The notes under the pieces are model-generated. The model ran no database searches, was not told the origin of the DNA, and saw nothing but the letters and a program-made list of their open reading frames with translations. A stretch of DNA of 64,000 bases from Chiloscyllium plagiosum (lineage: Eukaryota): NCBI RefSeq assembly GCF_004010195.1, contig NC_057746.1:26804070-26868069 (forward strand), in the 5' to 3' direction. The translations under genes were made by a program, and so were the position numbers. This document shows, piece by piece, positions 1,033 to 55,797 of the stretch (positions within the stretch are counted from its first letter, which is position 1; each line of letters opens with the position of its first letter).

Positions 1033-1160
1033 TCAAGACTCACAGAAATACACGAAAGAAATTGTGAGAATGATGATGACAGAAAACACAGAAAGTTTCA
1101 ATCCAACCAGAATCATCTGCCAAAGTAGAGACCTTCCGCTGCTCACAAGTGGCTGGCTGC
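1033..1160 (-). CDS. Gene A exon 3, stalk + TM with Lys + 3-aa tail (RSQPLVSSGRSLLWQMILVGLKLSVFSVIIILTISFVYFCES*)
   Basis: Strong acceptor ttttgttttccgtag|, phase 1 continues the V frame, long hydrophobic run with one Lys (1096-1098), TGA at 1033-1035. Too short to appear in the ORF track. Confidence 0.85.
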
Positions 1161-2438
1161 CTACGGAAAACAAAAAGATTCGAATTCAGCATTTGCTTCC
1201 CATAGTTCACTGTTACAGTTCAGTGCAGTGCTCACTCGGCTTGCTGCCAATTCCTTTTCACATTCCGTCTAGTTTGGTCTCGAATCCTCACATTTGCTTT
1301 CGTTTTGGTTGTCAATAATGGACTCTTTCCCCCCACCCCACCCCACCCCCCCCCCCTCCCCCATTGCCCTCGCCTCGCGCCACCACCACGAAGATTTCTC
1401 TTGTGGCAAGTTGAAAGTGTTCCCATTTCTTGGTAAAAAGGTCGAGATTCAATGCCTACCTGTCCCGGAGACGTGTAGTGACATGGTCAGTTAGGTTAAT
1501 TAAACTAACTACATGATATTGGAAGGAAATTTGTTGTATTTATTATCTAACATGTCGGCTGAGCACCTATTGCATTGAATATGTGACAGTTGCGTGCCTC
1601 ATGTCATACAGATCTTCATTCATCTGTTTGAAGTTATGATGTTGAACAAAAAATTATTCTATGAAATGCAACAGTTTGCAATATATATTGCAAGAGCTTT
1701 CTAATGTGTGAATATGGGCCACTATAACAATGAATTATCTTTATCTATCTAACTATATAGCCATCTAATACATCCAGCTCAATTTCTATCTCATCGTCCC
1801 AACTCTAGCCATTGCCACGCCCTCGCTCTTCACACGCATTATTGCTCTCATTCTCGCCATGTAAACTTACGTTTAACTGTTAACACTGTTCCTGGTCCAA
1901 ACTCTTCCTCAAAGAACAATATTACCTGACAGTAATATGTGCCCGAATCATCCTGTTTCAGATTCGTAATTGCGATGGAAGCATTTCGATTGGTTTTGAA
2001 AGAGGGTCGGTCCACCTCTAAAATCCTACCCAAGAATCTTGCGGATTTATTGGTTACTTTGGTATCTTCTCTTCCATTTTTAATGTCTTTGTGCCAGGAG
2101 AAAGCTCCAATCATTTGATCGTGAGATGCATTGTAGGTGCAGAGAAAGTGAGCTGTTTCTCCCTCGGTAGCTTCAGTGTAGAGAGGTTCTTGATGCACTA
2201 TGATCTTGCTGGCAGCTGTGACTGTAAGATGAATTCTCATTGTAGTGTATGTACAGACTGAGGTAAGTATTACCTCTATGGACTGCTACAATAGCTAAGC
2301 TCATCATGTGTTTTTTCTTGCCATATGCCTCAGCAGCTACTTAAGTTTGCTCTACTATGCAGTAACTACATGAAGAAAAAAAGTAAACAGCTTACTCAGC
2401 AATAGTGTCGATGTCCAGAGTAGATCAATGGCATTCAT
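1033..2438 (-). CDS. NCR3: Gene A: NKp30/NCR3-like single V-set Ig receptor, activating type; join(2438..2396, 2221..1871, 1160..1033), 173 aa
   Basis: Three exons with canonical ag/gt sites and matching phase 1-1 junctions; 43+351+128=522 nt open to TGA. The V domain resembles human NKp30 (CTYNAS~CSFNAS, IGAFSW~IGSVTW, RFLGRI~EFRGRL). Symbol is family-level; orthology is not resolved. Confidence 0.85.
1871..2221 (-). CDS. Gene A exon 2, VJ-type Ig V domain
   Basis: Acceptor cttacag| (alternative in-frame cacag| giving start 2215). B-strand Cys, C-strand Trp, DSGTYYC, FGPGTVLTV. Donor C|gtaagt. Confidence 0.92.
2396..2438 (-). CDS. Gene A exon 1, signal peptide MNAIDLLWTSTLLL
   Basis: ATG at 2438, hydrophobic, ends A|gtaagc (phase 1), 43 nt. 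Confidence 0.8.
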
Positions 2439-2719
2439 TGCTTCTCAGCGATCTAGGAATCACAACAATATTTTGTTAATCCCACATTCAATCGTGATAT
2501 TTAATGGAATGTCAAAGTACAACGGTTATACAATAAAGCTTCCCTATGTCACCGATAATTGCTTACTATCTCAACACGGACATCACAGCATGCTCCTACA
2601 TACTGATTAATATCAGTAAGATATCCTTACATTCTTAATTCTGAAGATATTTGTTAGCTCTTTAACTATCTTACTGACAAGTATATTAAGACTTGTTACA
2701 TATGCAGGATGCATACATG

Positions 2720-2840
2720 TTTGTTCCTGTGACTGTTTAATTTGAAACTCAGGATTTAAAAGAAATCCCTGAGAAATCGGAAAGGAAAATAGACCACAAA
2801 AAAAACCCGTTTCGTTTTGACAACCGTGATGAACCACAAA
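2720..2840 (-). promoter_or_regulatory. Putative gene A promoter: two RUNX cores (ACCACA at 2793-2798 and 2833-2838), an IRF-like GTTTCGTTTT and an ETS core
   Basis: Motif matches 280-400 bp upstream of the ATG; function is inferred only. Confidence 0.35.
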
Positions 2841-4319: not shown

Positions 4320-5337
4320 AGAGTCATAGAGATGTACAGCACGGAAACAGACCCTCTGTACCAACTCGTTTTTGCCAACCAGATATCCAAAGCAAATCTA
4401 GTCCTACTTGGCAGCACCTGGCCCATATTCTTCCAATCCAGATTCCTTTTAAATGTTGTAATTGTACCAACTTCCACCACTTCCTCTGGCAGCCCATTTT
4501 ATACACGCACCACTGTCTGTGGGAAAAAGTTGCCCCTTAGCTCTCTTTTAAATCTTATCTATCTCACCTTAAACCTTTGCCCTCTAGTTTTGGACTTCCC
4601 TACACTGAGGAAAAGACCTTGGCTATTCACCCTATCAGTGCCCTTCATGATTTTATAAACCTCTAGAAGGTTACCCCTCAGCCTCCGATGCTCAAGGGAA
4701 AAAAGTCCAAGCCTATCCAGCCTCTCCTGAAAATTCCAACCTTCCAGTCTCGGTGACATCCTTGTAATTCTTTTTTCCACCCTCCAAACCCTTCCTATTC
4801 CTATACCCATCCAGATGCCTTTTAAATGTTGCAATTGTACCAGCCTCCACTACATCCCCTGGTAGCTCATTCCATACACATACCACCCTCCTCATGAAAA
4901 AGTTGCCCCTTAGGTCTCTTCTATATCTTCCCCTCTCACACTAAACCTACGCCCTCTAGTTCTGGATTCTCCTACCCCAGAGAAAAGACCTTGTCTGTTT
5001 ACCCTATTCATGCCTCTCATTATTTTCTAAACCTGTATAAAGTCACCCATCAGCCTCCATTGATCCAGGTAAAACAGCCCCAGCCTATTCAACGTCTCCT
5101 TATAGCTCAAATCCTCCAACCCTGGCAACATCCCTGTAAATCTTTCTGAACCCTTTTAAGTTTCACAACATCTTTCCGATAGGAAGAAGACCAGAATTGC
5201 ACGCAATATTCCAAACGTGGCCTAACTAATGTCCTGTACAGCCGCAACATGACTTCCCAACTCCTGTACGCAACACTCTAACCAATAAAGGAAAGCATAC
5301 CAAACGTCTTCTTCACTATCCAATCTACCTGCGACTC
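4320..5337 (-). mobile_element. CR1 LINE 3' ends (two tandem partial copies)
   Basis: RT C-terminus ERLDRLGLFSLEHRRLRGNL plus CR1 3' UTR, repeated. Confidence 0.85.
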
Positions 5338-13202: not shown

Positions 13203-13484
13203 CTACAAGCGCACTGTTGCATACACGATCTGCTCGTCCTTCCTCGTGGCAGTCGGTAAAGGATCGAACCGAACCCCAGCCAGACTCTGAGCCGGTTGAC
13301 TCGGTGCCGAATACACAACCGATTCTTCATTACGTTTTGGAAATGGCGCCGACTCACTCACTGCTGGGTTTTCACTGAGCACATGCAACTTTGTGCACGC
13401 AGCCTGATCGGGAGGACGGTGGTGGGTGTCTGAGCGACTGATATTTAACTTGGCATAAATCGTGCTATCCGATAAGTCTTGATC
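13203..13484 (-). CDS. Gene B last exon, tyrosine-motif tail (TIYAKL, VVYSAP, IVYATV)
   Basis: ttgcag| phase 0; 93 codons plus TAG; ITSM-like and ITIM consensus motifs. Confidence 0.85.
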   Translation of the reverse strand, partial: DQDLSDSTIYAKLNISRSDTHHRPPDQAACTKLHVLSENPAVSESAPFPKRNEESVVYSAPSQPAQSLAGVRFDPLPTATRKDEQIVYATVRL

Positions 13485-16400
13485 CTGCAAATAACCAGAT
13501 CATTATTTACAGCATTTTCAAATGCAGGATGTCAGGGTTCCTAAGTGAAGAAATATGCAATTAGCTGCAGCAGTAGTATTGATGTGTGATCTTGTGGCCC
13601 CATTGCTGTCGGTTCGAATAAATGCTTTCTTTTTCCTTATCGTATTTTGCACAAGCCATAACTGGACAGAATTACACCAATGAAACCCCAGAACGTTTGT
13701 TAAGTATGTTATGGACGAGGCCAGACCACTCAAAACATTCTTAAGCAGGCAGCCCAAACCGTAACTTTGCAGTTTGTTTCGGTAAGTGTACGCAGAAACT
13801 TACCCAAAGTTAGCTAAGTTGACTCCCAGGTTTTAAAACAGCCAAAAATGCATTCACAAAATTACGAAATGAAACACAAAGAATAAAGAACACCTACAGA
13901 ACTCAGTCTATCCAAAGTAGACTTAGTTATGCTGTTCTGAATATGCACGACACTTCCAAGATACAAACCCCTTAAACACCGTAAAAACGAAACAAAGGCT
14001 ACAGGTCGAAGTTAGAAGGACAGCGACTTTAGCAACCTGTTTCCACACAGCTCCACTGCTGAACTGACTCTAATTTAACTTATGCTTTCACAACTGACCT
14101 TTCATTATGCAGTTCACTTCTAAAGCTTAAAAACGTTGGCCTAATGTCTCATCTGTTTCCATATAAACAAAAAAAGCCTATTATCTCTGTACCAAACCAG
14201 TCGATTCTGAGCCTGAGCGGTTTACGACCCCTCTGAAAAAAACAAAGGGCACATTATCCTTGAGATAAGGAACAGCTTTTAGAAAAAAATGAGCAGCTTT
14301 GTGACAAGTACCTGTTTTGATACTATATCTTATTTTGTAAATCTTAGTCCATAATGTGCGGAAAAGCATTTCCTCGACTTCACACAACTGCAGAATGTTC
14401 ACAGATTGAATAGGGACTGAGCAAATATCCGTGATATTGCAGCTACTTTTTCTTTCTTTCTGACGCTGGTAAATTTATAAAAGCATTTTTACAACAGAAA
14501 TAGCTCTTCGTTTTCGATGTCACAAGTCGACAATGAGCAATGAAAATTTTACATTCGTCATGGGAATGAGCAAAAATTAACCAGGAAACCAGTTGCATTC
14601 CATTTAAGGTGGAAGATGAGGATTTCATTTCACAAACGATTGTCACGAAGGTAGACTGACAACAAGAGTTGGTGCATTGCTCTCTCAGCTTCTAGACCTC
14701 AATTCGATCTAAGCCCACAGCACGCAAGCGACAAGGCTGATTGGGTTAAAGTTTAGACACTTTAAAGCAACCATAGTCTGTACTCGCCGTCAGGAATCAT
14801 GGTAGTTAAATCACGATGTTGTGCCGAACACGACGCGAAATTAAACCAATCCCTTCTGCCTGCACTTCATCCATGTCCTTCCGCTCCTTGCATACTAATG
14901 TGTTTATCTTAAAGTCCCTTAAACGCCCCTTCCGTATCTGCCTCCACCAACACCCTTGTCAGCGCATTCAACACTCCTCCCACTCTCTGTTAAAAAAAAC
15001 TTGCTTCTCACACCTCCTTTGAACTTTCTCCCTCTCACCTTAAATGCATGCCCGAGTTTTAAACATTTCCACTCTGGGAAAAAGATTCTGACCGTCAACT
15101 CTATCTATGAACCTCATAACTTTAAAGATTTCTATAAAGTCTCCCCTCAGCCTCCGCCGGTCCGGAGAAAACAAGTCGAGTTTTTTGTAGACTGTTCCTT
15201 ATAAGTCGTACCCTGTAAACCACGCAGCATCCTGGTAAACCTCTTCTGTACCATTTCCAAAGCCTCCAGATCGCTCTGCAATGTGGCGACCAGAATTGAA
15301 CGCAATACTCTAAGTATGGTCTAATTAAAGTCTTATATAGCTGAAGCATGGCATCCTAAATCCTGTATTCAGTTCCCCTATCAATAAAGGCAAGCATGGC
15401 ATACGCCTTCTTTACCACCCTATCTATTTGCGTGGCAACTTTCAGGAGTGATGTAATCGAATTTAGGTGACGTAACGTACAATTTAAAAAGAAACAGTTT
15501 GCGGTGATGTCTTTAATGTAAAAAAGTCTATAAGAAACGAAAACTGACCACTAGCTGAATGCAAGGAGGAAAACTATTTTCTTCTATGGTAAGAAAAAAT
15601 ATTGAGAGCATAGATATTGGGCGGACTCTAACGATTTGAAAACAGAACTTATAAAAGTGATTCCGCTTTCATGGCTTGAACCATGGAACCACCAGAGTCA
15701 GTTATTATCTTCGCCTGTTAATAATACGTTAAAATGGATTTGTGCTTCACAATAAAATTATTATCCCCCTCGAGAATAAGAACAATCGAATAATAGAATA
15801 TTAGATTCCTACAGTGTGGAAGCAGGCCATTCGGCTCATAGAGCCCGCACCGACCATCCGAACAGCATCCCAACCAGACTCAACTCACGAGCATATCCCT
15901 GTAATCCTGCATTTCCAATGTCTAACCCAAATAGCCTGCACATTCCTGGACACTATGGGAAATTTAGCACGGCCAATACACCTAACCTACACACGTGTGG
16001 ACTGGAAACCGACGCAGACACGGGAAGATTGTGCAAACTCCATACATACCAGATTTTTCAGTCTGGAGGCTTCAGTTATACATAGCTCATTTGCAACTTG
16101 CTCTCTAGTTCCATTATCTGTAAAAGTTTTTAATCGATTAGATAACTTAAAGCTGGAACAAAATTAACATTTACATAAATGCATTACTACAGTCAAGACA
16201 TTATGCGAGGAAAGATCAATAACTTTTGTATTTCTTTACATTTTGATTTTGGTGGTTCAGGGCAGCTAGATACAGGCAAAAAAATGTTGGCCTAGCCAGT
16301 AACATCTGTGCCCCACCAGAGAATATATTGAAAGTAAAATGTGTCTTTGCATGTCAAAAACGTTGGCATGTGAGGGTTGGTTACTTTTTTGAAGTATTTT

Positions 16401-19400: not shown

Positions 19401-22400
19401 GCTCTCCCCTTCGCTCTCCTTTTCAAGAGTTTGCTTTCATCAACAAATAATTTGGCCAGTTATGCCGGCAGCACAGAGAAGATTTGCAAGTATGATACTA
19501 AAAATATGCAGACATATGCATCGACAAAGGCTGAATATCTTCTCTTGAGAAAAGAAGATTGAAGCATGAATTTAGGGAATTCTTTAAAATTATGAAAGCT
19601 TTCTTACAATCGATACAAGGAAATTCTTCCTTTTATGGGCAAAAGCTTAGATAGAAGTCACCAATACAAGATCACCATTAAGTATTTTAAGAGGAAATCG
19701 AGAAGCAACTTATTTCTGTAAACTATGACAAGAGCGTGAAGCCTATTACCACAGTGTGCTTGAATCGAATAATAGATCTATAATTAAAAGTAATCTAGAA
19801 AAACACAGAAAGAGATATTAAAATTACTAGATTTATTAATTGTGATGATAATAGATCGGAAGAAGTTCAAGAAGAGAACACTAAGTGGTCGCTCATTGTA
19901 TGTTGTTTTGTAGTTGAGTTCAGTACTTACAAGGAGGTCTGCTACTGTGCCGAGTAGAGAACATTTTGATTATGATTAAAGCGACCGGCACCAGGACCAC
20001 CACTGAAAATATAAGCAGATTGGTGTTCCACTGATATGGAGATGGTGTTTCTTCAGAATCAATATGAGCTGCAAATAGGGGGGAGAAAAGCTATTTATTT
20101 CTTAATGTCTTCCCACTTCTCTTTGTGTTCTTAGTAGTGGCTATATTGGTTTCATGTTTAATTTAAAAGCTGCAAATGATAGCAGGGCACCTAGATCGTG
20201 AGTAGATAAAACAAAAAACTAAGTATCTTTTCATCATCCTGTTCTGTGCTATTCACTGCAGTTATTTTTAGTCTGTTATAATTAAGATAAACTTGTACAA
20301 AATAAGCACAAACAAGATCAGCAGCCAAAGCCACAATAAAGATTCAGTTGGGTGAGTGCAAGGCGTTAGAGTGGAGGAGGGGCAGATGTAGATTGTAGTA
20401 ACAGAGGGAGGTGAAAGCATTGTACATTGTGCTGTGTATCGCTTCATTTTTCTCACTTACAGTCTATTTTAGAACAAAAACCGCTTGTCATATAAATTGC
20501 TTACTTTCCACTAATTTGACCTTAGCAACGCAGTACGGATTCAAAATGGATTCAAAAATCCTGTTACTCTGAATCTAATATATAAATAATCATAAATTAA
20601 ATATCAATAACTATGCACCAGCCATCTTCTACCCGATTAAATCATCAATTAGAATAAGACAATTCCAGTTTACACTTTGCAGCTTAGATCCTCTCCATGC
20701 TACTTTGTGAAGATCATAGAGATTGCTGACCGCATTGAAACTATCTTAAGTTCCATATCATGTGGAACAACTAGCCAGCTATTAGTCAATTATGATGTAA
20801 TGTATGATGGCTGTAGCAAGTCATTTTTTTAACGAAGCAGCTTCCTGAAATGAAAAAGGAAAGGAAAGGATATTTCGAGCTCATGGTCCCTTCTTCATTA
20901 TTATGTAGTCACATACCAGTTGACAAATGTGTAACCATGCACTTCAAACATGTTAATTAATTCAGTCCAAATAAAATCAATTATCCTGTTTTGTTATGGT
21001 TTCATCAGGTCATTCGTTATTCTACATGACAGATATCAAGATATTGCACCAGCACTACCATTTATTGCCAAGTTGGAATGTGGGAATCATTGCCTAGGCC
21101 AGCATTTATTACACCTCTGCTATCCAATGTTGCCTTGAAGAGTTGGCAGTGTGCCTCCCTTTTGGCAAATAAGTGGTTTGCTAGGTCGGTTGGGATAGAC
21201 TATTAAAGGTCGAGAACATTGTAATTCTACTTTCAGGGAGCTATGGACTTGAACCCCCAAGATCCCTCTGTACATCAGCGCTGTTCGGAGTCCTGCCATT
21301 AATTGCATATCTTTCCTTAACATTTGATCTCCCTAGGCACAACACTTCACACTTAGATGAATTAACTTGCATCTGCTATTTCTCTGCCCACATCTGCAAC
21401 TGATCTATAACCTAATGTGTCCTTTGACTACATTCTACATTATCCACAACCCAACTGATCTTTGTATTATTTGCAAAATTAATAACTCACTCGTCTACAT
21501 TTTCATCCAACTCATATGTATATCACAAACAACAGACGTCCCAGTGCAGATACCCGCAGAACACCACGAGTCACAGACCTTCAGCCTGAAAACAACCTTC
21601 CATTACTACCCTATGCCTTCTATGGGCAAGCCAATTCTGAATCCACGTAACCAAGTCACAGTAGATCCCTTGCATCTTAATTTTCTACATGAGCCTATCG
21701 CCAGGAACCTTGTCGAAAGCCTTACTAAAATCCATGTAGACAACATCCACTGCTCTACCCTCATTGATCACTTTTGCCATGGTCTTGATAAATTCAAATC
21801 AGGTTAATAAAACATGACCTGCCCTGCGAAAGCCATGCTGACTACCCCGAATTAAGCCATACTTTTCCAAATGTATGTAACTCCTATCTCTAAGAAATCT
21901 CTCCACCAGCTTCTCAACCACAGATGTGAGGCTCACTGGTCGATAATTTCCTGCAATTTCCCTATTTCCCTTCTTTAATAGTGGAACAACATTAGCCACT
22001 CACCAGTTCTCTGGGACCTCTCCAGTGGCTGGTGAGGATGCAAAGATCTTGGTCAAGGTCCCAGCAATTTCCTCTCTTGCGTCTCTCACTTACTTAGGGT
22101 AGATACCAATTGCGCCGCGAGGACTTATCCATCTCAATGCGCTTCAAAAGAACTAACACCACTTCTTTCTTGATCTCAAAATGCCCTAGCATGTTAGCAT
22201 GCACCACACAAATGTCGCTTTCCTCCATATACTTCTCCTGGGTGCAATGCACTTATTTAGGATCTCACCCACATCTTCTGCCTCTAAGTGTAAGTACCCT
22301 CTTTTATCCTAAGTGATCCTACCTCCTCCCAACAGTTATCCTCTTGTTTTTAATGTATATATAGAATATCTTGGGATTATGTATAAACCTACTTACTGAG

Positions 22401-39990: not shown

Positions 39991-42492
39991 CTCATCAGAA
40001 TCGTCTAAGTTTCGACTGAGTGAGGGTATAAAGAAAGTGAAAGGGAATCAGATTCTTTCTGAGGCAACTCTTCTCGAGAATTGGTTAGGGAGGCATTGCA
40101 GAAATGACTTCTTCTGTAGGTGAAGTGATTGCAAAATAGATGGAAAATATTCATTCCACTATCCGTCCTCGACCCTCACCATTGTAGTTTCTGCACGTTC
40201 GCATTGATTTCATCCTGTATATGCTATACCATACTAAACTGCTGTGGCAGTAGAATTATCTGGCCAATTATCTCTTTAAATTCCCTTCTTTTCACCGAGA
40301 TAAGCAGCAAGGAGTCGATAGCACGTGGTTGTCATGCGTCAGCCAATTTACTCAACTGACCGGAAAACCGCATTCTATTGTTAGTTGTGCACCACAGATG
40401 CACATTTCAAATAATAACGAGGCGTTGTGAACTTAAAGCAAATGTCTCACTGGTGCTCACTCGACGGGTGATGCATTAACAAACTCAGTGTCCTGTAACT
40501 TCTAGTTGTCAAATTACCATAATCAAATTACCATTAACAAATCATCAAATGCAACCAACTGGCGAGTTGCTTGTCCTGCTATTGACTTAAACTCATAAGA
40601 GTGGAGCTGTTTGCTGGTTAACATCAACATGTTCATTATCCAACACAAACAGGTAATGGTGGTAGTGCTTTTAGACTTGGAGAGCTTAAAATCTGACAGA
40701 AGCATCTCTTCCCACTTTGATGGGTAAAAAGCAAAATGAACCATTTCATCGTGGAAAAATCCCAGAATTTTTAAAAGAAAATTCTGATCCAATAGTGACC
40801 ACGTGGCCACCTACCGATTTTTTATGAAATCCATCTGATTCACTAATGTCCTTTAGGGAAGAAAATCTGTCAACTTTAGCTGGTCTGAGCTCTCTGTGAC
40901 TCCAGACTCAGAGAAATGTGATTGACACTTAACTGACCTCTGGGCAATTAAGGATGGGCAATACATTGTGGTCGAGCCAATGACACCCACGTCTCGTGAG
41001 TGACTAAGGAAATATTAGTGTGAATCTTGTGCTATTAAAAGTAAAGTACCCTTCTAAATTCTTACCATGCAACAAATCTCAGCTTTTAAGGGGTGTGGGG
41101 CTAGGGGTTCATTAGCTCCAAAAAGATAAACCTAACAATAAAGACCCTCAGATGATATATTTGGTAAGAAAAATGTGAAAAGACGGTACTTACCTAAGAC
41201 TTAAAAGGGTTGCAGTAGCTAAGAGAGCTAGAGCACTTTGAAAACTTATTGCTCAACTTACAAAACAAAAGCAACAAAGAAGTACTGAACATCTCAACAG
41301 CTCCAACAGTATCTGTCCAGAGTGAATTAACATTTTGAGTCCACTATGACTCTTGTTGGGAAACACAGACAAAGGGAGTCCTGGTGGCTCAGCAGTGCTC
41401 TTGTTGGGACATGCAGCACTTGGTTCCCAGCCAGCCTTAAGAAGATAACCTGCCCAGATATGGTGATCCCTTTGGACAACGAGCAGGCCACTCCAATAGC
41501 AGGCCTTTCCCTTCTCCATTGGAAAACAGACCCTACTGGCTTTTCAGTGAAAGAAGAGGCTTCCAGGCCTACTGGAACAGGCTGTGGAACTTTTAGAGAA
41601 ATCAATGTATCAAGGAACCATCTGAATGTATTTTCCTTGACCCCACATGGCCGTCACTCCAACCATCACTTCCATCTCTGCATGAGAGGGAAAATCAACT
41701 CATAAAATACAAATCAAAGAAGCTATGATAAAATTTTATAGTACACTGCTCAGCCTTAAGTGGAGGACAAAGTCCCATTCTGGATGAAATGCTTTAAGAA
41801 GGTTGGCAAGGCCTTAGAGAGAGAAAGCATGGAGGAGATGGAATTGTAGACAGGGATGAGAGGTTTCATTTATGCAGAGGGACTGGAGAAGTCCAGATTC
41901 TTACCTTCAGCAGTGAAATTTAAGAAGAAATTTAATCAAGTTCGTCAAAATCATGGATAGTTTTGAAAACTTAATCAGGAAAAAAATATTCACAGTAGCA
42001 GATGGTAACAAGGCAAAAAAAGGTTGCCATGTTTCAGTGATGTGCAACACCACTAGAAGCAATGTGAAAAAATCATTTCACAACAAGCCAAGTTTTATGA
42101 TCATGAATATTTGGTCCTCCACTTGGACATTCCCCTGCAGTGAGGCAGTCAGGATTGTATATATTACTCGAACTGAAATCTAACAAGTGTCTTATACAAG
42201 TTCAGCAAAACGTCCTCAAAGCCCCTTTTAATAAAGCCTTCATTTAGCATTCTCTTCACCTGTCCTGACTAATGCACATATACAGAGTCTAGATTAGAAT
42301 GGTGCTGGAAAAGCACAGCAGTTTAGGCAGCATCCGAGGAGCAGTACAATCGATGTTTCGGGCAAAAGCTCTTCATCAGGAATACAGGCAGAGAGCCTGA
42401 AGGGTGGAAAGATAAATGAGAGGAGGATGGGGGTGGGGAGAAAGTAGCATAGAGTACAATAGGTGAGTGGGGGAGAGGATGAAGATGATAGC

Positions 42493-43106
42493 NNNNNNNN
42501 NNNNNNNNNNNNNNNNNNNNNNNNNNNNNNNNNNNNNNNNNNNNNNNNNNNNNNNNNNNNNNNNNNNNNNNNNNNNNNNNNNNNNNNNNNNNNNNNNNNN
42601 NNNNNNNNNNNNNNNNNNNNNNNNNNNNNNNNNNNNNNNNNNNNNNNNNNNNNNNNNNNNNNNNNNNNNNNNNNNNNNNNNNNNNNNNNNNNNNNNNNNN
42701 NNNNNNNNNNNNNNNNNNNNNNNNNNNNNNNNNNNNNNNNNNNNNNNNNNNNNNNNNNNNNNNNNNNNNNNNNNNNNNNNNNNNNNNNNNNNNNNNNNNN
42801 NNNNNNNNNNNNNNNNNNNNNNNNNNNNNNNNNNNNNNNNNNNNNNNNNNNNNNNNNNNNNNNNNNNNNNNNNNNNNNNNNNNNNNNNNNNNNNNNNNNN
42901 NNNNNNNNNNNNNNNNNNNNNNNNNNNNNNNNNNNNNNNNNNNNNNNNNNNNNNNNNNNNNNNNNNNNNNNNNNNNNNNNNNNNNNNNNNNNNNNNNNNN
43001 NNNNNNNNNNNNNNNNNNNNNNNNNNNNNNNNNNNNNNNNNNNNNNNNNNNNNNNNNNNNNNNNNNNNNNNNNNNNNNNNNNNNNNNNNNNNNNNNNNNN
43101 NNNNNN
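42493..43106. other. Assembly gap
   Basis: Run of N. Confidence 1.
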
Positions 43107-43440
43107 TGGAAGTTTGGAACTGGGGTGAGGTGGGGGAAGGGGAAATGAGGAAACTGTTGAAGTCCATGTTGATGCCCTGGGGTTGAAGTGTTCTGAGGCG
43201 GAAGATGAGGCATTCTTCATCCAGGCGTCTGGTGGTAAGGGAGCGGCAGTGAAGGAGGCCCAGGACCTTCATGTCCTCAGCAGAGTGGGAGGGGGAGTTG
43301 AAATGTTGGGCCACAGGGCAGGTGGTTGATTGGTGTGGGTGTCATGGAGATGTTCCCTAAAGCACTCTGCTAGGAGGCATCCAGTCTCCCCAATGTAGAG
43401 GAGACCACATTGGGAGCAACGGATATAATAAATTTGTGTT

Positions 43441-43480
43441 GCAGACGTTTCGTCCCCTGTCTAGGTGACATCCTCAGTGC
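43441..43480 (-). ncRNA. Minimal hammerhead ribozyme motif of a second Penelope family, intact core
   Basis: Minus strand GCA-CTGAGGA-T-GTCACC tagaca GGGGAC-GAAACGTC-TGC: stem I GCA/TGC, ACGU helix III, GUC site. Confidence 0.65.
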
Positions 43481-44254
43481 TTGGGAGCCTCTTGTGATGC
43501 GCTTCTGTGATGTTTCCTCCGGCATTTATAGTGATTTGTATCTGCCGCTTCCGGTTGTCAGTTCCAGCTGTCTGCTGCAGTGGCTGGTATATTGGGTCCA
43601 GGTCGATGTGCTTATTGATTGAATCTGTGGATGAATGCCATGCCTCTAGGAATTCCCTGGCTGTTCTCTGTTTGGCTTGTTCTATAATAGTAGTGTTGTC
43701 CGGAAGCGACAGATACAAATCACTACAAATGCCGGAGGAAACATCACAGAAGTGCTTCACAAGAGGCTCACAAGCACTGGTTCCTCTAGACCAAAGAGGT
43801 AGCCATGGGCACCCATATGGGCACCAGCTATGCCTGTCTCTTTGTTGGCTATGTAGAACAGTCCATCTTCCGTAACTACACCGGCACCACACCCCACCTC
43901 TTCCTCGCTACATGGATGACTGCATTGGCACCACCTCGTGCTCCCACGAGCAGGTTGAGCAACTTCACCAACACATTCCACCCTGACCTTAAATTTACCT
44001 GGACCATCTCTGACACCTCCCTCCCCTTCCTGGACCTCTCCATCTCCATTAACGACGACCGACTTGACACTGCCAATTTTTACAAACCCACCGACTCCCA
44101 CAGCTACCTGGATTACACCTCTTCCCACCCTACCTCCTGCAAAAATGCCATCCCGTATTCCCAATTCCTCCACCTCTGCCGTATCTGCTCCCAGGAGGAC
44201 CAGTTCCACCACAGAACACACCAGATGGCCTCCTTCTTTAGAGACTGCTATTTC

Positions 44255-44920
44255 NNNNNNNNNNNNNNNNNNNNNNNNNNNNNNNNNNNNNNNNNNNNNN
44301 NNNNNNNNNNNNNNNNNNNNNNNNNNNNNNNNNNNNNNNNNNNNNNNNNNNNNNNNNNNNNNNNNNNNNNNNNNNNNNNNNNNNNNNNNNNNNNNNNNNN
44401 NNNNNNNNNNNNNNNNNNNNNNNNNNNNNNNNNNNNNNNNNNNNNNNNNNNNNNNNNNNNNNNNNNNNNNNNNNNNNNNNNNNNNNNNNNNNNNNNNNNN
44501 NNNNNNNNNNNNNNNNNNNNNNNNNNNNNNNNNNNNNNNNNNNNNNNNNNNNNNNNNNNNNNNNNNNNNNNNNNNNNNNNNNNNNNNNNNNNNNNNNNNN
44601 NNNNNNNNNNNNNNNNNNNNNNNNNNNNNNNNNNNNNNNNNNNNNNNNNNNNNNNNNNNNNNNNNNNNNNNNNNNNNNNNNNNNNNNNNNNNNNNNNNNN
44701 NNNNNNNNNNNNNNNNNNNNNNNNNNNNNNNNNNNNNNNNNNNNNNNNNNNNNNNNNNNNNNNNNNNNNNNNNNNNNNNNNNNNNNNNNNNNNNNNNNNN
44801 NNNNNNNNNNNNNNNNNNNNNNNNNNNNNNNNNNNNNNNNNNNNNNNNNNNNNNNNNNNNNNNNNNNNNNNNNNNNNNNNNNNNNNNNNNNNNNNNNNNN
44901 NNNNNNNNNNNNNNNNNNNN
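44255..44920. other. Assembly gap
   Basis: Run of N. Confidence 1.
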
Positions 44921-45404
44921 ATGCTACTTTCTCCTCACCCCCACCCTCCTCTCATTTATCTCTCCACCCTTCAGGCTCTCTGCCTGTATTCCTGATGAAG
45001 GGCTATTGCCCGAAACATCGATTTTACTGCTCCTCGGCTGCTGTCTGAACTGCTGTGCTTTTCCAGCACCACTCTAATCTAGACTCTGGTTTCCAGCATC
45101 TGCTGTCTTTGTTTTTACTTTATGCACATATACATGCAAGTTTCTTTGTTCCTATAATTCCTTAAGAGTTTTACTCTATATTGTTTGCATTATCACTGTA
45201 TGTTGTTACAACTGAAGTGTCACATCACACTTCACCTGACTGAAATTCATTAGTTACCTATCCAGCTCCTCCATCAACTTGTCAATTGCACATTCACAGT
45301 TCTAGATTAAGAATTCATTTCAGATCTAGATTTCACCTTTAACTTCTATGACGACTGTAAATTGGTGTGGAATCACTGGAGGGAGATTGGATTACAGCAT
45401 GTCA

Positions 45405-50195: not shown

Positions 50196-50422
50196 AACAT
50201 GAACTTTGGCTATTTTTATTAACGCTCTCAGAGTATTCGGTGATGCCTGTGTGATAATCAAATCCTATTCCGTCCTCATTGTTTATCGCTCGGATCACAT
50301 TGGGAGGATGAATACATCTGGTCTGTTTGGGGTTAAACCAACGCCGCGTCAGCATTACATGTCACTCCGTTTTCCTGTAGATTACATGCGAGTTCTTATT
50401 ACCGTGCAGAGCAAGAAACAAG

Positions 50423-53400
50423 ATGCAAACCGTTCAAAGATGGATGTTCCTGAATGTCATGACCGTTTTCCTGCAGACAGGTGAGTCTCTGCCCTGCTAT
50501 TACCGCGTATGTACATGTGGGGCTTTAACACGGACGAAAGGACAAACTAAAAGCGAAAGAATGAACGTAGTGAATGCTGTGAATCAGAGACCAAAACAAA
50601 ACCCCACATAAATTGCTGGAAAAGCTCCGCAGGTCTGGCAGCATCTGTGGAGAGAAATCAGAGTTAACTTTTCGGGCCCAGTTCTGAGGTAGGGTCACTC
50701 GACCCGAACCCGCTAACTCTTATTTCTCTCCGCAGATGCTGCCAGACCTGCTGAGCTTTTCCAGCAATTTCTGTTTTTGTTTCTGAAGGGACAATCTGGT
50801 ACCTTCGAGGAGAGTTGCTTCTTATTAAGCAGCTCTAAGCCATCGAGGGTGACTCCCTTCCACTCCAGTGTTGTGAGCCCTGAGGTGACTAAACTGTCCA
50901 ATATTAGAGCAAACAAAAAAAAACTGAAGTTGCTGGAAAAGCTCAGCAGGCCTGATCGCATCTGTCAGAGTTTTGAGGAAGGGTCTCCGGACCCGACACG
51001 CTGATTTCTCTCCACAAATGCTGCCAGACCTGCTGAGGTTTTCCGGCAACTTCTGCTTTTGTTTCTGTTTTACAGCATCCACTGTTCTTTCGGTTTTTGT
51101 CCAATACTGGACCCTCCCACTTTTGTGGTGTTTGCTGAACCAAGTTAACGGTTAATCAAGTCACAGTGTGTGTAGGAGAGAAAATGTTTTGATTAATACT
51201 GTGGAGTAATGTAGATTGGTACATTTTGGTGAGAAGAGGGTTGAGAGGCATCATTAAGTGAAGTCTATCAAGACGGTGCACATGTGCATGAGTCATTAAA
51301 GGTGGCAAGACAGTTTGAGTGTGGCTAGCGCAGCAAACAGTATCCGAGGCCTTTTTAATGCATGAAGGGCAATTGTAAAGAAGTTATGTAGAAGGTGGAC
51401 AAGACACTGGTTCAGCCTCAGCTGGAGTATTATAAGTTAGGAAGGACGTGAAAACCTTGGAGAAAGTGCAGAAGTATACAAAACAGTTCCAGGGATGAGG
51501 AATTTCAGTTACGAAGGTAGATTGGAGAAGCCAGAACTGTCCTCCTTGGAGAAGGAAAGGCAGAGGGAAGAATTGATTGACGTGTTTAAACTCTGAGACG
51601 TTGGGAAGAGTAACTAGGGAGAAAGTGTTCCCACTCGTGGAAAGGTGGAGAATAAGAACGCAAGAGTTAAAGCAATTAGTAAAAGAAGCAAAAGTATTAT
51701 GAAGAAAGGAATTTTCCTGCGGCGAGTAGTTAGGCTATAAAGTAAACTGCCTGAGAATGTAATGGAGTACAGTTGGAGCAGAGACGGGACTTGATTGAGT
51801 TGTTTTAATCAACCTGTTTAAAAATACTATTACACACTTCTGGAGCAGGTGCGACTTGAACCTGGGTCTCCTGGCTCAAAGGACGGGACTACCGTGCCAC
51901 TGAAGTTTCTCCTGATGTGTTATAAAAGAGTATAAGGGTGGTGAGAGGGTGTAGGAGTAGCAGTTATTAACCCCTTAGGTTAACGGTGAATAACCAGGGG
52001 ACGTTATTTATGGTGAAGGATGTGACGTTTCGAAGGGATTTGAAGAAACCCAGAGGGTGGCGGGAATTTGAAATGCATTTCTTTGGAGGCTAGCTGTGGC
52101 AGGAAACCACGTAACCTTTAAAATGCATTTGTTTGAGCAATGGAAATACCATAACATTCAAGGTTGTGGGCCAAGTACTGGAACATGGGATTACTATAGA
52201 TTTAGAAATGTGTTTGTCGAGTACAGCGTTAATGGGGCGAAGAGCCTCTTCTTTACTGCGTGATTCTATGATTCCAGAGAAATTTACCAGCGGAGTTAGA
52301 CTGCTCTCTGAAAGGGAACAACGGGCATGCTTATGGGGGAAGGCAGAAAATAGAACACGGAGCTGGAAATATGGGGAGCTGGTGCAGAAGGGATTCCGGA
52401 TGCAGAAGGAGGCCGTTCGGCCCTACATTGTATCTGCACCATCTGTCCTATGAGCCTCGTCACTTTGAACCTTCCCCCTTAATCATGTGCATAGTTTCCA
52501 TTTAAATAAATATCTATTGATCTATCAAATGCCTTAATTAAACCTGCCATCATCACACTTCCAGACTCAAACACTCATTCTGTGAAAAAACTTCTTTTCT
52601 CTGTCACGGTTCTGGAACTGTTTTTGTAGATGTGTTCCGCAATCCTTCGAATGCATTCTCATCCTTCCCATAGTTTGGTGCCCAAAACTGTATACAATAC
52701 CTCAACTGAGGCTTAAAAATGCATACATCCATGACGGGCCAAACTTTCATACAGAGTTACAATTCCATTATGAACAGTTTTATCATAAACGGAAACAGTG
52801 TGGATTGAGGTCATTTGGCCCACGGTTCCTCCTGTGGCTCTTTGAAAGAGTTATTAGATTCCCTACAGTGTGGAAACAGGCCCTTCGGCCCAACAAGTCC
52901 ACACCGACCCACGGAAGAGCAACCCACCCAGACCCATTCCCCTCTGACTTGCACTATGGGCAATTTAGCATGGTCAATTCACCTAACCTGCAGTTCTTTG
53001 GGAGGAAACCGGAGCAAACCCACGCAGACAGGGGGAGAATGAGCAAACACCACACAGACAGTTGCCCAAGGCGGGAATTAAACCTGGGTTCCTGGCGCTG
53101 TGAGGCAACAGTGCTAACCATTGAGCCACCGTGCCACCCTGCTGCTGTTTTCCTATGTTCATTTAACTGATTTCTTTTGCAAGTTTTTAGCTAATTATTT
53201 TGTGTATTCCTATTGCTAATTGGTTTCCAATATGCTTTTAACTGGTGAATTCCAGGTTTCATATGTTATATATATTAACCATTCTCATTTTAGAAAATTC
53301 TGAGGATAGCCACGAAAGATTAATTTCAGTAGTTCTGGAAATAACCAAACCCTTGGACTCCTAACAGAATTTTTAAAATGCAAATACAAAAAATACTGTG

Positions 53401-55797
53401 GAGATCTGAAATTGAAAATAACACAAATTGCTGGAAATATTCAACAGCTCTTGTGACATGATCTGGGAAATAATCAGACTTCAGCATGAAACCTAATTTG
53501 GGAGATCATATCCCTCATTTTTGTAGTTGATTAACATTGTGGTTTCTCACTGAAACATGTTGCCGTGTATCTGCAGATATTATTTCGAACAACAATCTTT
53601 TTTTTACACAAATGAAAAATAAAAGACACAGCTAGCTAGGAAGATTTCAATTCTAACACTAAAACAAAGATTCAATCTGTTTTCCAAAGTAATTGCTGCA
53701 CAGACTCAGTCCCAGAGATACAGCGTTCCTATCTCAGATTTTCAAAATCTTACTTAATTCACAGCAAATGGGGAAATGTGAATTTGCCGATTTTGGCAGG
53801 AAGAATAAAAAAGTAGCATACTATTTAAATGGGAAGGGTTTGCAAAACTCAAAGGCTCAAAGTGATCTTGGCACCCGATACATGAATCACCAAGAGCTAG
53901 TTTGCACATACAGCGAGTAATTAGCAAGACGTTTGGAATTTTTTTCTCTGGAGGGGAATGAAATATAAGAGTTAGGAAATCTGACTATGGAGGTTATGGA
54001 TGAGGTCACATCTGGCACATGATGTACAATTTCCATCTTGGGCTGTGGGCATCACTGGCAAGCTTGGCATTTGTTCAAGATTTGTGCTTGTTGCCAAACC
54101 CAAATTAACTTTACTAGGCTATTTCAGAGAGCACATCCAGCCCCACCCACCGCCTCCTATTTATCTCTCCACCCTCGAGGCTTCCAGCCACATTCCTGAT
54201 GAAGGGCTTTTGCCTGAACTTCGATTTTCCTGCTCCTTACCTGACCTGCTGTGCTTTTCTAGCGCCACATTCTTGACTCCATTTCAGAAGGCAGTTTAGA
54301 GTCAACAGAATTGCTTTGGATCTGAAGTCAGACTTCCCTCCCCAAAACATATTAGTTTTACAAACATTTCAGATACTTCAACAGTCACCGTTATTCAAAA
54401 GAATTAATAATCTTTGGATTGCTTTTATTAATAATGTGTTGAACCCATGTTCCAGGAGCATTACCTTGCACCTTTGGATTACTAATCCAGTATTTATTTT
54501 TAAATGTAGCCTATTATCCTAATGTTATGGCACATATCTAGAGTTGGTGAGACTTGACCCTGGTCTCTCAGTTTTGGGGAAAATAGAGTACCACTGCACC
54601 ACAAGAGGCCCCAATCCAGTGAACTTTACATTTAAGTGAAAAGTCTCTCAACCTTCTAATTAATTGATACTTCACACTCAAATACATAGGGGCACTGTTT
54701 ATTCTTTATTGGCATGTGAGCATCATTGGCACAACTGACATTTATTTCTGAATCTGAATAACACTAGAGAGACTGATGATTGGACATCATTTTTAATAAC
54801 TAGTGCTGTTTAGAACAGAGTTCCAGAATTTTGACCTATTAACAGTAAGGAACAGTGATATAGTGCCAAGTCTGAAAGATGTTTCTCTTGGAAGGGAACA
54901 CGTGGTTTTCCTATGCCTCTGCAGCCATTATCCTCCTATCTGATAGAGATCGCAGGTTGGAATTTGATGTAAAAGGAGACTTAGCGAGTGCAATTTGTCG
55001 ATGGTTATTTCTGCTGCCACTTTGCAATGTCACAGAGAGCTTGAATATTGAAGCTTGGATGGGGTGCCAAACTATCTATCTGCTTTGACTGGGATGATGT
55101 CTGTTTCCTGAAATGTTGAAACTGTAACTGTTTGAGCAGACCTCTCAAACAGTATCGCAGACCTCTCCTGTATCCCACATATTAGAGGAAGGCTTTGGGG
55201 AATCTAGAAGTTAAGTTGTTGTTTCAAACAGATGTGAATGTCGGGAATTCTCCACCTCAGAGAGGAGTGGATGCTGAGTCATTGAATATGAAAGAAATTG
55301 ATCAAATTTTGGATTCCTTAGGATTGAATTTCTTGAGAATTATTCTGGAGGTGTTCTTGAGGTAGAAAATCATCCATTATTTTAGTTATTGGTGGAGCAA
55401 GCTCCAAGTTGTGACTGCTATTGATCATGTGTCCTTATGAAATTGCTCCATTGTAATCCAGACAACGTGCTGATGAGAGAAGTCAAAGTGGTGCAGTCTC
55501 CAAATGTTCATGTGACAGAAGGTGAATCTGTGCAGCTGAACTGCACCTTTGATGTACTGAACACTGTTGGACGAATTGTTTGGAGGCGTGCCATTGAAAA
55601 CATGGAAATTTCGAACAGTAATCCTTTCTATAAGAGACGGCTGGAGAAGTCGGGGGCTGAGTTATTTGTCCAGGGCAAGGCTTTCATTAAACTCAACAGA
55701 GTATTGAAATTGGACTCGGATTTTTACTACTGTGAGGTGGAATTCCCGGCAATTGGGAGTCGCAACGGGACCGCAACACAACTTGTTGTAACTGACA
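50423..55797 (+). CDS. NCR3: Gene C: NKp30/NCR3-like V-set receptor, 5' part only; join(50423..50480, 55462..55797)
   Basis: Leader MQTVQRWMFLNVMTVFLQT G|gtgagt (phase 1). V exon ccag|...A|gtaagt, 336 nt: VVQSPNVHVTEGESVQLNCTF..VGRIVW..DSDFYYCEV..NGTATQLVV. TM exon not found before 64000. Symbol is family-level. Confidence 0.75.
50610..51060. repeat. Two palindromic non-autonomous Penelope-derived elements (50610-50770, ~50925-51055) with degenerate hammerhead cores in the loop
   Basis: The ~59-bp arms at 50610-50668 and 50712-50770 are near reverse complements; the loop holds CTGAGGT-A-GGGTC..GACCC-GAAC. Confidence 0.75.
52853..53137 (-). mobile_element. V-SINE
   Basis: Family consensus. 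Confidence 0.85.
55462..55797 (+). CDS. Gene C V-domain exon
   Basis: Canonical V-set Cys/Trp/DxxxYYC with phase 1-1 splice sites. Confidence 0.9.

What the first reader, a model, noticed from the sequence alone, without database searches (positions are those of the whole stretch)
1033..55797. Paired activating/inhibitory NKp30-like receptor cluster in a shark-type genome
Seen: three related single-exon VJ-type V domains. A and B are in tandem with identical 43-nt leader exons but opposite signalling modules: A has a TM Lys and a 3-aa tail; B has an uncharged TM core and a >120-aa tail with ITSM/ITIM motifs. C is divergent. Established: human NCR3/NKp30 is a single activating receptor (TM Arg, CD3zeta/FcRgamma adaptors, ligand B7-H6), and paired receptors (KIR, LILR, SIRP, CD300, teleost NITR) combine these two architectures. 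NCR3 homologues are known in cartilaginous fish, so the family itself is not new. Inference: this locus is an NKp30-based paired receptor system; whether these specific genes are described cannot be judged from here.
Basis: partly seen in the sequence, partly recalled or inferred. Interest (0 to 1): 0.85.

Follow-up and report, generated by a model that had tools for sequence, protein, structure and literature searches.

The report
Bamboo shark NKp30-family receptor gene cluster
Three neighbouring bamboo shark genes belong to the known NKp30 (NCR3) immune-receptor family, one built like an activating receptor and one like an inhibitory receptor, but both are already annotated and their binding domains are too different to be a true matched pair.

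Summary
The window comes from Chiloscyllium plagiosum and carries three single-exon V-set domains.

- **Gene A (3 exons):** equals RefSeq XP_043533736.1. It has a Lys in the membrane span and a 3-residue tail. It is 85-87% identical to a nurse shark protein named NCR3.
- **Gene B (5 exons):** equals RefSeq XP_043533738.1. It has an uncharged membrane core and a tail of about 126 residues ending in a canonical ITIM. Contigs from two samples splice the ITIM exon to the exon before it.
- **Gene C:** only the leader and V exons lie in the window.
- **Correction:** the two 43-nt leaders match in length only (18 of 43 bases).
- **Assembly gaps:** they lie in a repeat between B and C and touch no exon.

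NKp30-family membership is supported. B and C hit human NKp30 first in the PDB. A shark-only profile scores NKp30 24 bits above the next single-V-domain chain.

"Paired receptor" in the strict sense is not supported. The A and B V domains are 37.5% identical, and each has its own orthologue in another shark.

The shark NCR3 family is published (Kinlein 2021, not readable here). This scan also noted ITIM-bearing NKp30-like genes elsewhere in this genome. The finding is ordinary: new members of a known kind.

The parts
2396..2438 (-). Gene A leader exon (43 nt, phase 1, donor GTAAGC)
   Evidence: Matches residues 1-14 of RefSeq XP_043533736.1 (P0001).
1871..2221 (-). Gene A V-set exon (351 nt, phase 1 at both ends), G strand FGPGTVLTV
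   Evidence: Pfam V-set 7.8e-17. tblastn with P0001 maps it here. 87% identical to nurse shark NCR3 P0002 over 113 tree columns.
1033..1160 (-). Gene A stalk and membrane-span exon with a Lys in the span, 3-residue tail and stop
   Evidence: (100% to P0001 residues 133-173). The Lys is kept in nurse shark P0002.
27091..27133 (-). Gene B leader exon (43 nt, phase 1, donor GTGAGT)
   Evidence: (100% to P0003 residues 1-14).
24070..24423 (-). Gene B V-set exon (354 nt), G strand TGEGTRVTV
   Evidence: Pfam V-set 3.1e-12. Best PDB match is human NKp30, 1.1e-10. 100% to P0003.
19931..20068 (-). Gene B stalk and membrane-span exon, uncharged core, ends in phase 1
   Evidence: (100% to P0003 residues 133-178).
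16050..16117 (-). Gene B first cytoplasmic exon (68 nt, takes phase 1 to phase 0)
   Evidence: Spliced to the tail exon in one contig each of runs X3 and X4.
13203..13484 (-). Gene B last coding exon: tyrosine motifs TIYAKL and VVYSAP, canonical ITIM IVYATV, stop
   Evidence: Joint 13483|16049 with intron ends CT..AC on the + strand. Contigs run past 13000, so the 3' untranslated part extends lower.
14311..14713 (-). Alternative exon with no open frame, spliced to B's tail exon in one contig
   Evidence: Joint 13483|14311 in run X4, one contig, 28 nt on the short side. An in-frame stop lies 6 codons before the donor. Run X1 has a contig at 14352-14622.
50423..50480 (+). Gene C candidate leader exon (58 nt, phase 1, donor GTGAGT)
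   Evidence: tblastn with the leader of horn shark NCR3-like isoform X1 (P0157) hits here, E 2.4e-05..
55462..55797 (+). Gene C V-set exon (336 nt, phase 1 at both ends); no membrane-span exon found in the window
   Evidence: Pfam V-set 8.5e-07. Best PDB match NKp30, 1.2e-07. 60.7% to horn shark NCR3-like P0139. No later exon at E up to 50.
42283..45088 (.). Repeat element bounded by inverted arms that holds both assembly gaps; not part of any receptor gene

Best explanation
This is a segment of the whitespotted bamboo shark genome with three members of the NKp30/NCR3 receptor family. They are old, divergent paralogues.

- **Gene A** encodes a 173-residue type I protein: signal peptide, one V domain, a stalk, a membrane span with a Lys, and a 3-residue tail. 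By inference it cannot signal alone. It would pair through the Lys with an ITAM adaptor that carries a membrane Asp (DAP12, FcR gamma or CD3 zeta type) and so activate the cell.
- **Gene B** lies next to A on the same strand and encodes a 294-residue protein. It has one V domain, an uncharged membrane span and a tail of about 126 residues. The tail's C-terminal ITIM, once phosphorylated, would by inference recruit SHP-type phosphatases and inhibit the cell.
- **Gene C** is on the other strand and contributes a leader and a V exon. The rest of it lies outside the window or is missing.

The gene structures and the family assignment are shown here. The signalling is inferred from architecture. 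Because the V domains differ so much, A and B most likely bind different ligands. They are not a matched pair for one ligand.
For: **Species and gene identity**
- A's V exon finds RefSeq XP_043533736.1 of C. plagiosum at 100% identity and a nurse shark protein named NCR3 at 85%.
- B's V exon finds XP_043533738.1 at 100%.
- Both RefSeq proteins map back at 100% to 3 and 5 exons with canonical splice sites and matching phases.

**RNA**
- The joint between 16050 and 13484, with GT..AG intron ends on the minus strand, is seen in one contig each of X3 and X4. These are two samples of one study.

**Family**
- Human NKp30 is the top PDB hit for B (1.1e-10; next hit 5e-07) and for C (1.2e-07; next hit 1.6e-04).
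- A profile built from 11 cartilaginous-fish sequences only scores NKp30 at 82.4 bits in a single stretch. The next chain with one V domain, SIRP alpha, scores 58.5 bits.
- Of 30 hit proteins looked up by name, 13 are NCR3 or NCR3-like, 13 uncharacterised, 2 pIgR-like, 1 IgSF11-like and 1 unnamed.
- Equus, Cricetulus, Trichosurus and Xenopus NCR3 are among B's hits.

**Conserved signalling modules**
- The membrane Lys lies in a shared G-[VL]-K-L context (A-A-K-L in P0046) in A, nurse shark P0002, and ray, skate and catshark proteins P0016, P0028, P0046 and P0040.
- A C-terminal [ITV]-V-Y-[AS]-[AT]-V motif is shared by B, horn shark P0009, white shark P0036 and Xenopus NCR3 P0047.

**Orthology**
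- A pairs with the nurse shark protein (SH-aLRT 100).
- B pairs with horn shark P0009 (93).
- C pairs with horn shark P0139/P0157 (98).
Against: - A taken alone matches antibody light-chain V domains and pIgR better than NKp30 in the PDB (NKp30 1.6e-06).
- The language-model Atlas places A nearest a SIRP-like cluster and C nearest a PD-1-family cluster. No nearest named cluster is NCR3. That tool searches only clusters of 50 or more members and gives no alignment.
- The tree has no outgroup from other V families, because none could be stored. Its deep forks are weak (support 21). The set holding A and B has support 81, and C falls outside it.
- Reads confirm one of B's four junctions. The membrane-span exon to 68-nt exon junction lay outside the 6000-letter stretch. 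A 99-nt overhang of the X4 contig points that way, but its letters were not shown.
- I tested no RNA evidence for A or C.
- Raw single-cell reads (X8) gave no read on the stretch, so that run was no test.
- Adaptor pairing, SHP recruitment and ligands are inference only.
Confidence: 0.85

Rival explanations
1. A and B are a true paired activating/inhibitory receptor system of the KIR, LILR, SIRP or CD300 kind. They recognise the same or closely related ligands with opposite signals.
For: - The genes are adjacent, on the same strand, and have opposite signalling modules.
- Both have 43-nt phase-1 leaders.
- Both fall in the same cartilaginous-fish set on the tree (support 81).
- On that tree the signalling type changes at least 4 times among 16 typed proteins, so module exchange does occur in this family.
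Against: - The V domains are 37.5% identical at protein level and 58% at DNA level. From recall, classic pairs are usually above 80%.
- The leaders match at only 18 of 43 bases.
- A and B each pair with a protein from another shark order or species, so their split is old.
- No closer twin of either was found. A's V exon search (proteins of 64-203 residues) returned only P0001 and P0002. B's V exon search returned nothing. The full-length P0003 search returned only itself. An A-like inhibitory twin longer than 203 residues would have been missed.
Confidence: 0.12
2. The V domains belong to another V-type receptor family (SIRP, PD-1/CD28, CD79, pIgR-like or an NITR-like lineage). The NCR3 names are only automatic labels.
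For: - RefSeq gives gene A the symbol cd79b.
- A's best PDB hits are antibody V domains and pIgR.
- The Atlas's nearest named clusters are SIRP-like for A and PD-1 family for C.
- Multi-V proteins named pIgR-like are strong hits.
Against: - NKp30 is the first PDB hit for B and C by 3-4 orders of magnitude.
- NKp30 is the best chain with one V domain for the shark-only profile, by 24 bits.
- No PD-1, CD28 or CD79 chain is in the top 60.
- A has a 3-residue tail, so it lacks the ITAM that defines CD79b (the definition is recalled).
- A's nurse shark orthologue carries the name NCR3 in UniRef. I take it, but did not check, to be one of the nurse shark NCR3 genes MT914154-914161 listed in PMC12227049.
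Confidence: 0.05
3. The ITIM tail is wrongly joined to B by automatic gene prediction and belongs to a separate transcript.
For: - One X4 contig joins the tail exon to a different upstream exon (14311-14713) that has no open frame.
- The membrane-span exon to 68-nt exon junction was not seen directly.
Against: - The 68-nt exon restores the reading frame exactly between the membrane-span exon (ends phase 1) and the tail exon (starts phase 0).
- It is spliced to the tail exon in contigs of two samples.
- Horn shark P0009 has the same V + membrane span + tail order, with homologous tail blocks (NEESVV, VRF-[DE]-P, C-terminal VY-A-x-V-R).
- No other V or membrane-span exon lies between 2.4 and 24 kb.
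Confidence: 0.03

Closest known systems
Nurse shark NCR3 family (Kinlein et al. 2021, Immunogenetics 73:333; GenBank MT914154-914161)
   Same: - Gene A is 85-87% identical to a nurse shark protein that UniRef names NCR3 (P0002). Both have the same leader, V domain, stalk and Lys-bearing membrane span.
- From my recollection of the abstract, the paper reports eight highly divergent subtypes linked to the shark MHC.
- The title and reference were seen in reference lists. The accession range was seen in PMC12227049.
   Different: - The species differs.
- No close nurse shark counterpart of B or of its V domain was found in the protein database.
- I could not read the paper. I therefore cannot say whether it already describes ITIM-bearing subtypes or the A-B arrangement.
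Human NKp30 (NCR3; PDB 3NOI, 3PV6, 6YJP, 9FWW)
   Same: - One V-type domain with a J-like G strand.
- It is the best PDB match for B and C.
- A basic residue lies in the membrane span, as in gene A. The mammalian NCR3 hits carry an Arg.
   Different: - From recall, it is a single gene in humans with an Arg and CD3 zeta/FcR gamma coupling.
- Sharks have several divergent genes, including ITIM forms.
- A and B are 33-40% identical to tetrapod NCR3 V domains.
Amphibian NCR3/NCR3-like expansion (Xenopus XMIV genes)
   Same: - It is a multigene NCR3 family that includes inhibitory-type members.
- Xenopus tropicalis NCR3 XP_031756258.1 has an uncharged membrane span and a C-terminal IVYSTV. This aligns with B's IVYATV.
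   Different: - The anuran genes form their own clade of 37 rows, separate from A and B.
- The XMIV name and its MHC linkage are recalled. My search for XMIV found no relevant paper.
Paired receptors (KIR, LILR, SIRP, CD300, PILR)
   Same: Neighbouring genes with an adaptor-coupled short-tail form and an ITIM long-tail form.
   Different: The ectodomains of A and B are only 37.5% identical. The split predates the divergence of shark orders.

Membership tests
NKp30/NCR3 family | One V-set domain encoded by a single exon with a germline-joined J-like G strand (GxGT) | tested here: met
   Pfam V-set for all three. Each is a single phase-1 exon. A has FGPGT and B has TGEGT. C has NGTAT and lacks the second Gly.
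NKp30/NCR3 family | Closer in sequence to NKp30 than to other V-domain families | tested here: met
   - B and C hit NKp30 first in the PDB.
- In the shark-only profile NKp30 is the best chain with one V domain, 82.4 against 58.5 bits.
- A alone ranks NKp30 behind antibody V domains and pIgR.
- No rooted tree with outgroups could be made.
NKp30/NCR3 family | Orthology to a gene characterised as NCR3 | tested here: met
   - A pairs with nurse shark NCR3 P0002 at 87% identity, SH-aLRT 100.
- B and C pair only with automatically named horn shark NCR3-like proteins.
NKp30/NCR3 family | Location in or near the MHC | not testable with these tools
- Unchecked first-reader notes place MHC class I-like and class II-like features 17-26 Mb away on the same piece.
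- A bichir NCR3-like protein shares a 90% cluster with a model named PRC2A.
NKp30/NCR3 family | Binds a B7H6-type ligand | not testable with these tools
   Needs binding assays.
Activating, adaptor-coupled receptor | Basic residue inside the membrane span and a tail too short to signal | tested here: met
   Gene A has a Lys in the span and a 3-residue tail. The Lys is conserved in P0002, P0016, P0028, P0040 and P0046.
Activating, adaptor-coupled receptor | Physical association with an ITAM adaptor | not testable with these tools
   Needs co-precipitation with shark DAP12, FcR gamma or CD3 zeta.
ITIM-bearing inhibitory receptor | Uncharged membrane span and a canonical (S/I/V/L)xYxx(I/V/L) motif in the tail | tested here: met
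   Gene B has IVYATV at its C terminus. The motif is aligned and conserved in P0009, P0036 and Xenopus P0047. TIYAKL and VVYSAP depart from the consensus.
ITIM-bearing inhibitory receptor | Recruits SHP-1, SHP-2 or SHIP when phosphorylated | not testable with these tools
   Needs a phosphopeptide pull-down.
Paired receptors (KIR, LILR, SIRP, CD300 type) | Linked genes with opposite signalling modules | tested here: met
   A lies at 1033-2438 and B at 13203-27133 on the same strand. Their RefSeq accession numbers are consecutive.
Paired receptors (KIR, LILR, SIRP, CD300 type) | Near-identical ectodomains in the two partners | tested here: not met
   A and B V domains share 42 of 112 aligned residues, 37.5%. 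Each has a separate orthologue.
CD79b (the RefSeq gene symbol for A) | ITAM in the cytoplasmic tail | tested here: not met
   The tail is 3 residues and has no Tyr motif. No CD79 chain is among the top 60 PDB hits.

The most novel reading that the evidence does not exclude
The A-B neighbourhood is an ancient, conserved activating/inhibitory NCR3 gene couple. It would have been kept side by side since before the split of carpet sharks and horn sharks. The deliberately different V domains would read different B7H6-type ligands. In this reading the primordial MHC-linked NK receptor system already balanced positive and negative signals through the NKp30 family. B's lineage would also be a subtype absent from the published nurse shark set.
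Probability: 0.2. Interest if true: 0.45.

Novelty: new member of a known kind. Interest (0 to 1): 0.25.

Why it matters
- **Main value: annotation.** RefSeq calls gene A "uncharacterized protein cd79b" and gene B "uncharacterized protein LOC122541177". Both can be renamed NCR3-family members, with activating-type and inhibitory-type architecture respectively.
- **Evolution.** A basic membrane residue and a C-terminal ITIM are both conserved modules of the NKp30 family in cartilaginous fish. The ITIM is shared with Xenopus. The family probably carried both signs early in jawed vertebrates, and humans kept only the activating form.
- **Limit.** This fits the published picture of a diverse, MHC-linked shark NCR3 family. 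It does not change it.

Tried and rejected
**Searches that led nowhere**
- I looked for a second copy of A's leader in the window and found none. The claim of identical leaders was dropped.
- I looked for C's membrane-span and tail exons with a hydrophobicity scan. I also ran tblastn with the horn shark orthologue at E up to 50. Nothing credible lies between 55798 and 64000, a stretch filled with retroelement frames.
- I looked for more V exons with all 156 stored proteins. Only the three V loci matched; apart from the other A and B exons, the only extra hits were three weak ones to a single protein (P0067).
- The Atlas searches gave only generic V-set neighbours. I did not use them for family assignment.

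**Tools and reads**
- The raw single-cell run X8 laid no read on the stretch.

**Literature**
- Kinlein 2021, Flajnik 2012 and Ohta & Flajnik 2015 are not held. What I say of their content is recalled.
- Searches for NKp30 + ITIM + cartilaginous, NKp30 + Xenopus + MHC-linked + inhibitory, XMIV, NCR3 / nurse shark / ITIM, NKp30 + Xenopus + ITIM and NKp30-like / NCR3-like found no open paper that describes inhibitory shark NCR3 genes. This does not show that none exists.
The supplementary gene tables of PMC10751288 (elasmobranch MHC maps) may list NCR3 positions that bear on MHC linkage.

**Rows left out of counts**
- The tree used 109 single-domain proteins of 340 residues or fewer, out of 158 with a V domain. 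P0001 and P0003 were removed because they duplicate window rows. Multi-domain proteins were left out.
- The count of signalling changes typed 16 of the 18 rows of the A/B set. P0039 (partial) and P0029 (unclear) were left out.
- skipped proteins longer than 340 residues.

Full report
**What is there.**
The window is vertebrate DNA of about 40% G+C, rich in retroelement frames. It holds three open single-exon V-set domains:
- A at 1871-2221 on the minus strand
- B at 24070-24423 on the minus strand
- C at 55462-55797 on the plus strand

Pfam V-set E-values are 7.8e-17, 3.1e-12 and 8.5e-07. Each exon is phase 1 at both ends, as in Ig-superfamily genes generally, and has canonical AG and GT sites. 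A tblastn search with all 156 stored family proteins found no fourth V exon.

**Species and gene A.**
A's V exon finds a 173-residue RefSeq protein of Chiloscyllium plagiosum at 100% identity. This is XP_043533736.1/XP_043533737.1, named "uncharacterized protein cd79b". It also finds a 170-residue nurse shark protein at 85% that UniRef names natural cytotoxicity triggering receptor 3.

The RefSeq protein maps at 100% to three exons:
- leader 2438-2396
- V 2221-1871
- stalk and membrane span 1160-1033

The membrane span holds a Lys. Three residues follow it before the stop at 1033. The nurse shark orthologue keeps the Lys.

A GTGAGT sits just before the stop and could in principle act as a donor. 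Neither the RefSeq model nor the nurse shark protein uses it.

**Gene B.**
An exhaustive HMMER search with B's V exon returned a 294-residue protein at 100% identity. This is XP_043533738.1, "uncharacterized protein LOC122541177", the accession right after gene A's.

It maps at 100% to five exons:
- leader 27133-27091
- V 24423-24070
- stalk and membrane span 20068-19931
- a 68-nt cytoplasmic exon 16117-16050
- the last exon 13484-13203

When I read the sequence alone, I found that the membrane-span exon ends in phase 1 and the tail exon starts in phase 0. The 68-nt exon resolves this exactly.

The membrane core is uncharged and the tail is about 126 residues. The tail carries three tyrosine motifs:
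- TIYAKL is ITSM-like, but has Leu at +3.
- VVYSAP has no hydrophobic residue at +3.
- IVYATV, at the C terminus, is a canonical ITIM.

**RNA evidence.**
- Contigs of X3 and X4 (two samples, one study, kind not on record) join 13483 to 16049. The skipped part ends in CT..AC on the plus strand, which is a GT..AG intron on the minus strand. These contigs must therefore derive from spliced RNA. They tie the ITIM exon to the 68-nt exon.
- The X4 contig carries 99 further letters upstream of 16117 that do not lie on the stretch. This is what the membrane-span exon would give, but the letters were not shown, so that junction is not proven.
- One X4 contig joins the tail exon to 14311 instead. The upstream part, 14311-14713, has an in-frame stop six codons before the donor and no open frame. 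I take it to be a minor non-coding isoform.
- X1 covered only the 3' untranslated part. X8 laid no read and is no test.
- The other three junctions of B and all junctions of A rest on the RefSeq models, the sequence logic and conservation.

**Conservation of the architectures.**
- Horn shark XP_067865303.1 (P0009, named NCR3-like) is 52% identical to B in the V domain. It has the same order of parts, an uncharged membrane span, and tail blocks that align with B's, including NEESVV and a C-terminal TVYAAV.
- The same C-terminal motif aligns in white shark P0036 (VVYATV) and in Xenopus tropicalis NCR3 (LVYSTV and IVYSTV).
- The Lys-bearing span of A recurs, in a similar G-[VL]-K-L context (A-A-K-L in P0046), in ray, skate and catshark proteins P0016, P0028, P0046 and P0040.

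Both signalling modules are therefore old, conserved parts of this family.

**Gene C.**
- C's V exon is 60.7% identical to horn shark NCR3-like XP_067865593.1 (P0139).
- A 58-nt phase-1 exon at 50423-50480 matches the leader region of the longer horn shark isoform P0157 (E 2.4e-05) and ends in GTGAGT.
- No membrane-span or tail exon was found in the 8.2 kb that remain. C is therefore incomplete in this window.
- Its horn shark relative has an Arg in the membrane span and an 82-residue tail with LEYSTI.
- C's G strand lacks the second Gly of the J-like motif.

**Family assignment.**
- Against all PDB chains, human NKp30 is the first hit for B (1.1e-10; next hit 5e-07) and for C (1.2e-07; next hit SIRP alpha at 1.6e-04).
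- For A, NKp30 scores 1.6e-06, behind antibody V domains and pIgR.
- A profile built only from cartilaginous-fish sequences (alignment A2, 11 rows) scores NKp30 at 82.4 bits in a single stretch.
  - Only constructs with several V domains score higher, and they do so by summing domains. The best single domain in the top hit scores 37.7 bits.
  - The next chain with one V domain is SIRP alpha at 58.5 bits.
- Of 30 hit proteins looked up by name, 13 are NCR3 or NCR3-like, 13 uncharacterised, 2 pIgR-like, 1 IgSF11-like and 1 unnamed. The named ones include horse-family, hamster and possum NCR3.
- The Atlas gave only generic V-set neighbours: a SIRP-like cluster for A and a PD-1-family cluster for C. 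I report this as a result that does not support NCR3 specifically. The tool gives no alignment and searches only large clusters.
- No PD-1, CD28 or CD79 chain is in the top 60.

**Are A and B a pair?**
- The V domains are 37.5% (A-B), 25.7% (A-C) and 29.4% (B-C) identical.
- The two 43-nt leaders match at 18 of 43 bases.
- On a V-domain tree of 110 rows (quick method, SH-aLRT only, no outgroup families):
  - A pairs with the nurse shark protein (100).
  - B pairs with horn shark P0009 (93).
  - C pairs with horn shark P0139/P0157 (98).
  - A and B sit in an 18-row cartilaginous-fish set (81).
  - C falls on the other side of a weak root (21), next to the anuran expansion.
- The three genes are thus old paralogues.
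- Within the A/B set, membrane-Lys and ITIM forms are interspersed. At least 4 changes are needed among 16 typed rows.
- The closest activating/inhibitory V pair among the representatives is 62.8% identical, both from the stingray Hemitrygon akajei.
- Module exchange is therefore a habit of the family. A and B themselves fail the defining ectodomain-similarity test of paired receptors.

**The gaps.**
The two N runs lie inside one element bounded by 168-nt inverted arms, 94% complementary, at 42283-42450 and 44921-45088. This element lies between B and C, in DNA that also holds a LINE-type endonuclease frame at 32852-33631. No exon is near the gaps. Only the spacing and relative order of C depend on them.

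**What is known.**
- The title and reference of Kinlein et al. [quoted passage not shown]
- PMC12227049 lists nurse shark NCR3 genes MT914154-914161 in its methods and calls NCR3 a non-rearranging, MHC-linked VJ gene (passages).
- PMC10751288 places NKp30 among the non-rearranging VJ genes of the MHC lineage (passages).
- I could not read Kinlein 2021, Flajnik 2012 or Ohta & Flajnik 2015. Their content (eight divergent nurse shark subtypes, MHC linkage, Xenopus XMIV genes) is recalled.
- None of my open-text searches found a description of inhibitory shark NCR3 genes. This is not proof that none exists.
- Earlier first-reader notes of this scan flag further ITIM-bearing NKp30-like genes 8.2 Mb away and on another piece of this genome. 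Others flag MHC-like features 17-26 Mb away on the same piece. I did not check any of them.

**Verdict.**
The finding is real and correctly drawn, apart from the leader claim and the missed 68-nt exon. It is a cluster of NKp30-family genes with one activating-type and one inhibitory-type member. It is not a matched pair. Both complete genes are already in RefSeq, and the family is already described in sharks. Interest is low to moderate.

Noticed in passing
window 14311-14713 (-): A stretch with no open frame is spliced with a canonical intron to B's ITIM exon in one X4 contig. Run X1 also has a contig at 14352-14622. It may be an alternative non-coding first exon or a separate transcript.
   Followed up: partly
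window 1033-2438 (-): RefSeq gives gene A the symbol cd79b. The protein has a 3-residue tail and no ITAM, and its nurse shark orthologue is named NCR3. The symbol looks like a misnomer.
   Followed up: partly
window 24110-24265 (-): B's extra cysteines in a V-C-N-x-C context are shared with horn shark P0009 and stingray P0016 in alignment A1. They are a lineage feature and not an accident of this gene.
   Followed up: partly
window 42283-45088: An element bounded by 168-nt inverted arms (94% complementary) holds both assembly gaps. Related open frames recur at about 58000-60500.
   Followed up: partly
window 30217-33631 (-) and 60970-62927 (-): These are retroelement frames. The frame at 32852-33631 matches the endonuclease-reverse transcriptase family (PF14529, 4.1e-12). 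Similar frames lie after gene C.
   Followed up: partly
window 1330-1380 (-), intron 2 of gene A: A G-rich run on the minus strand (runs of G broken by single T) lies about 170 nt upstream of A's membrane-span exon.
   Followed up: no
window 15800-15999, 17000-17399, 18800-18999: Contig word depths in the hundreds to tens of thousands occur here in all three contig runs. This most likely reflects dispersed repeats transcribed from other copies, not B's introns.
   Followed up: no
protein cluster of P0012 (Polypterus senegalus): A two-V NCR3-like bichir protein shares a 90% cluster with a 596-residue model named PRC2A protein, partial. This may reflect a fused model with the class III MHC gene PRRC2A, which would hint at conserved linkage.
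   Followed up: no
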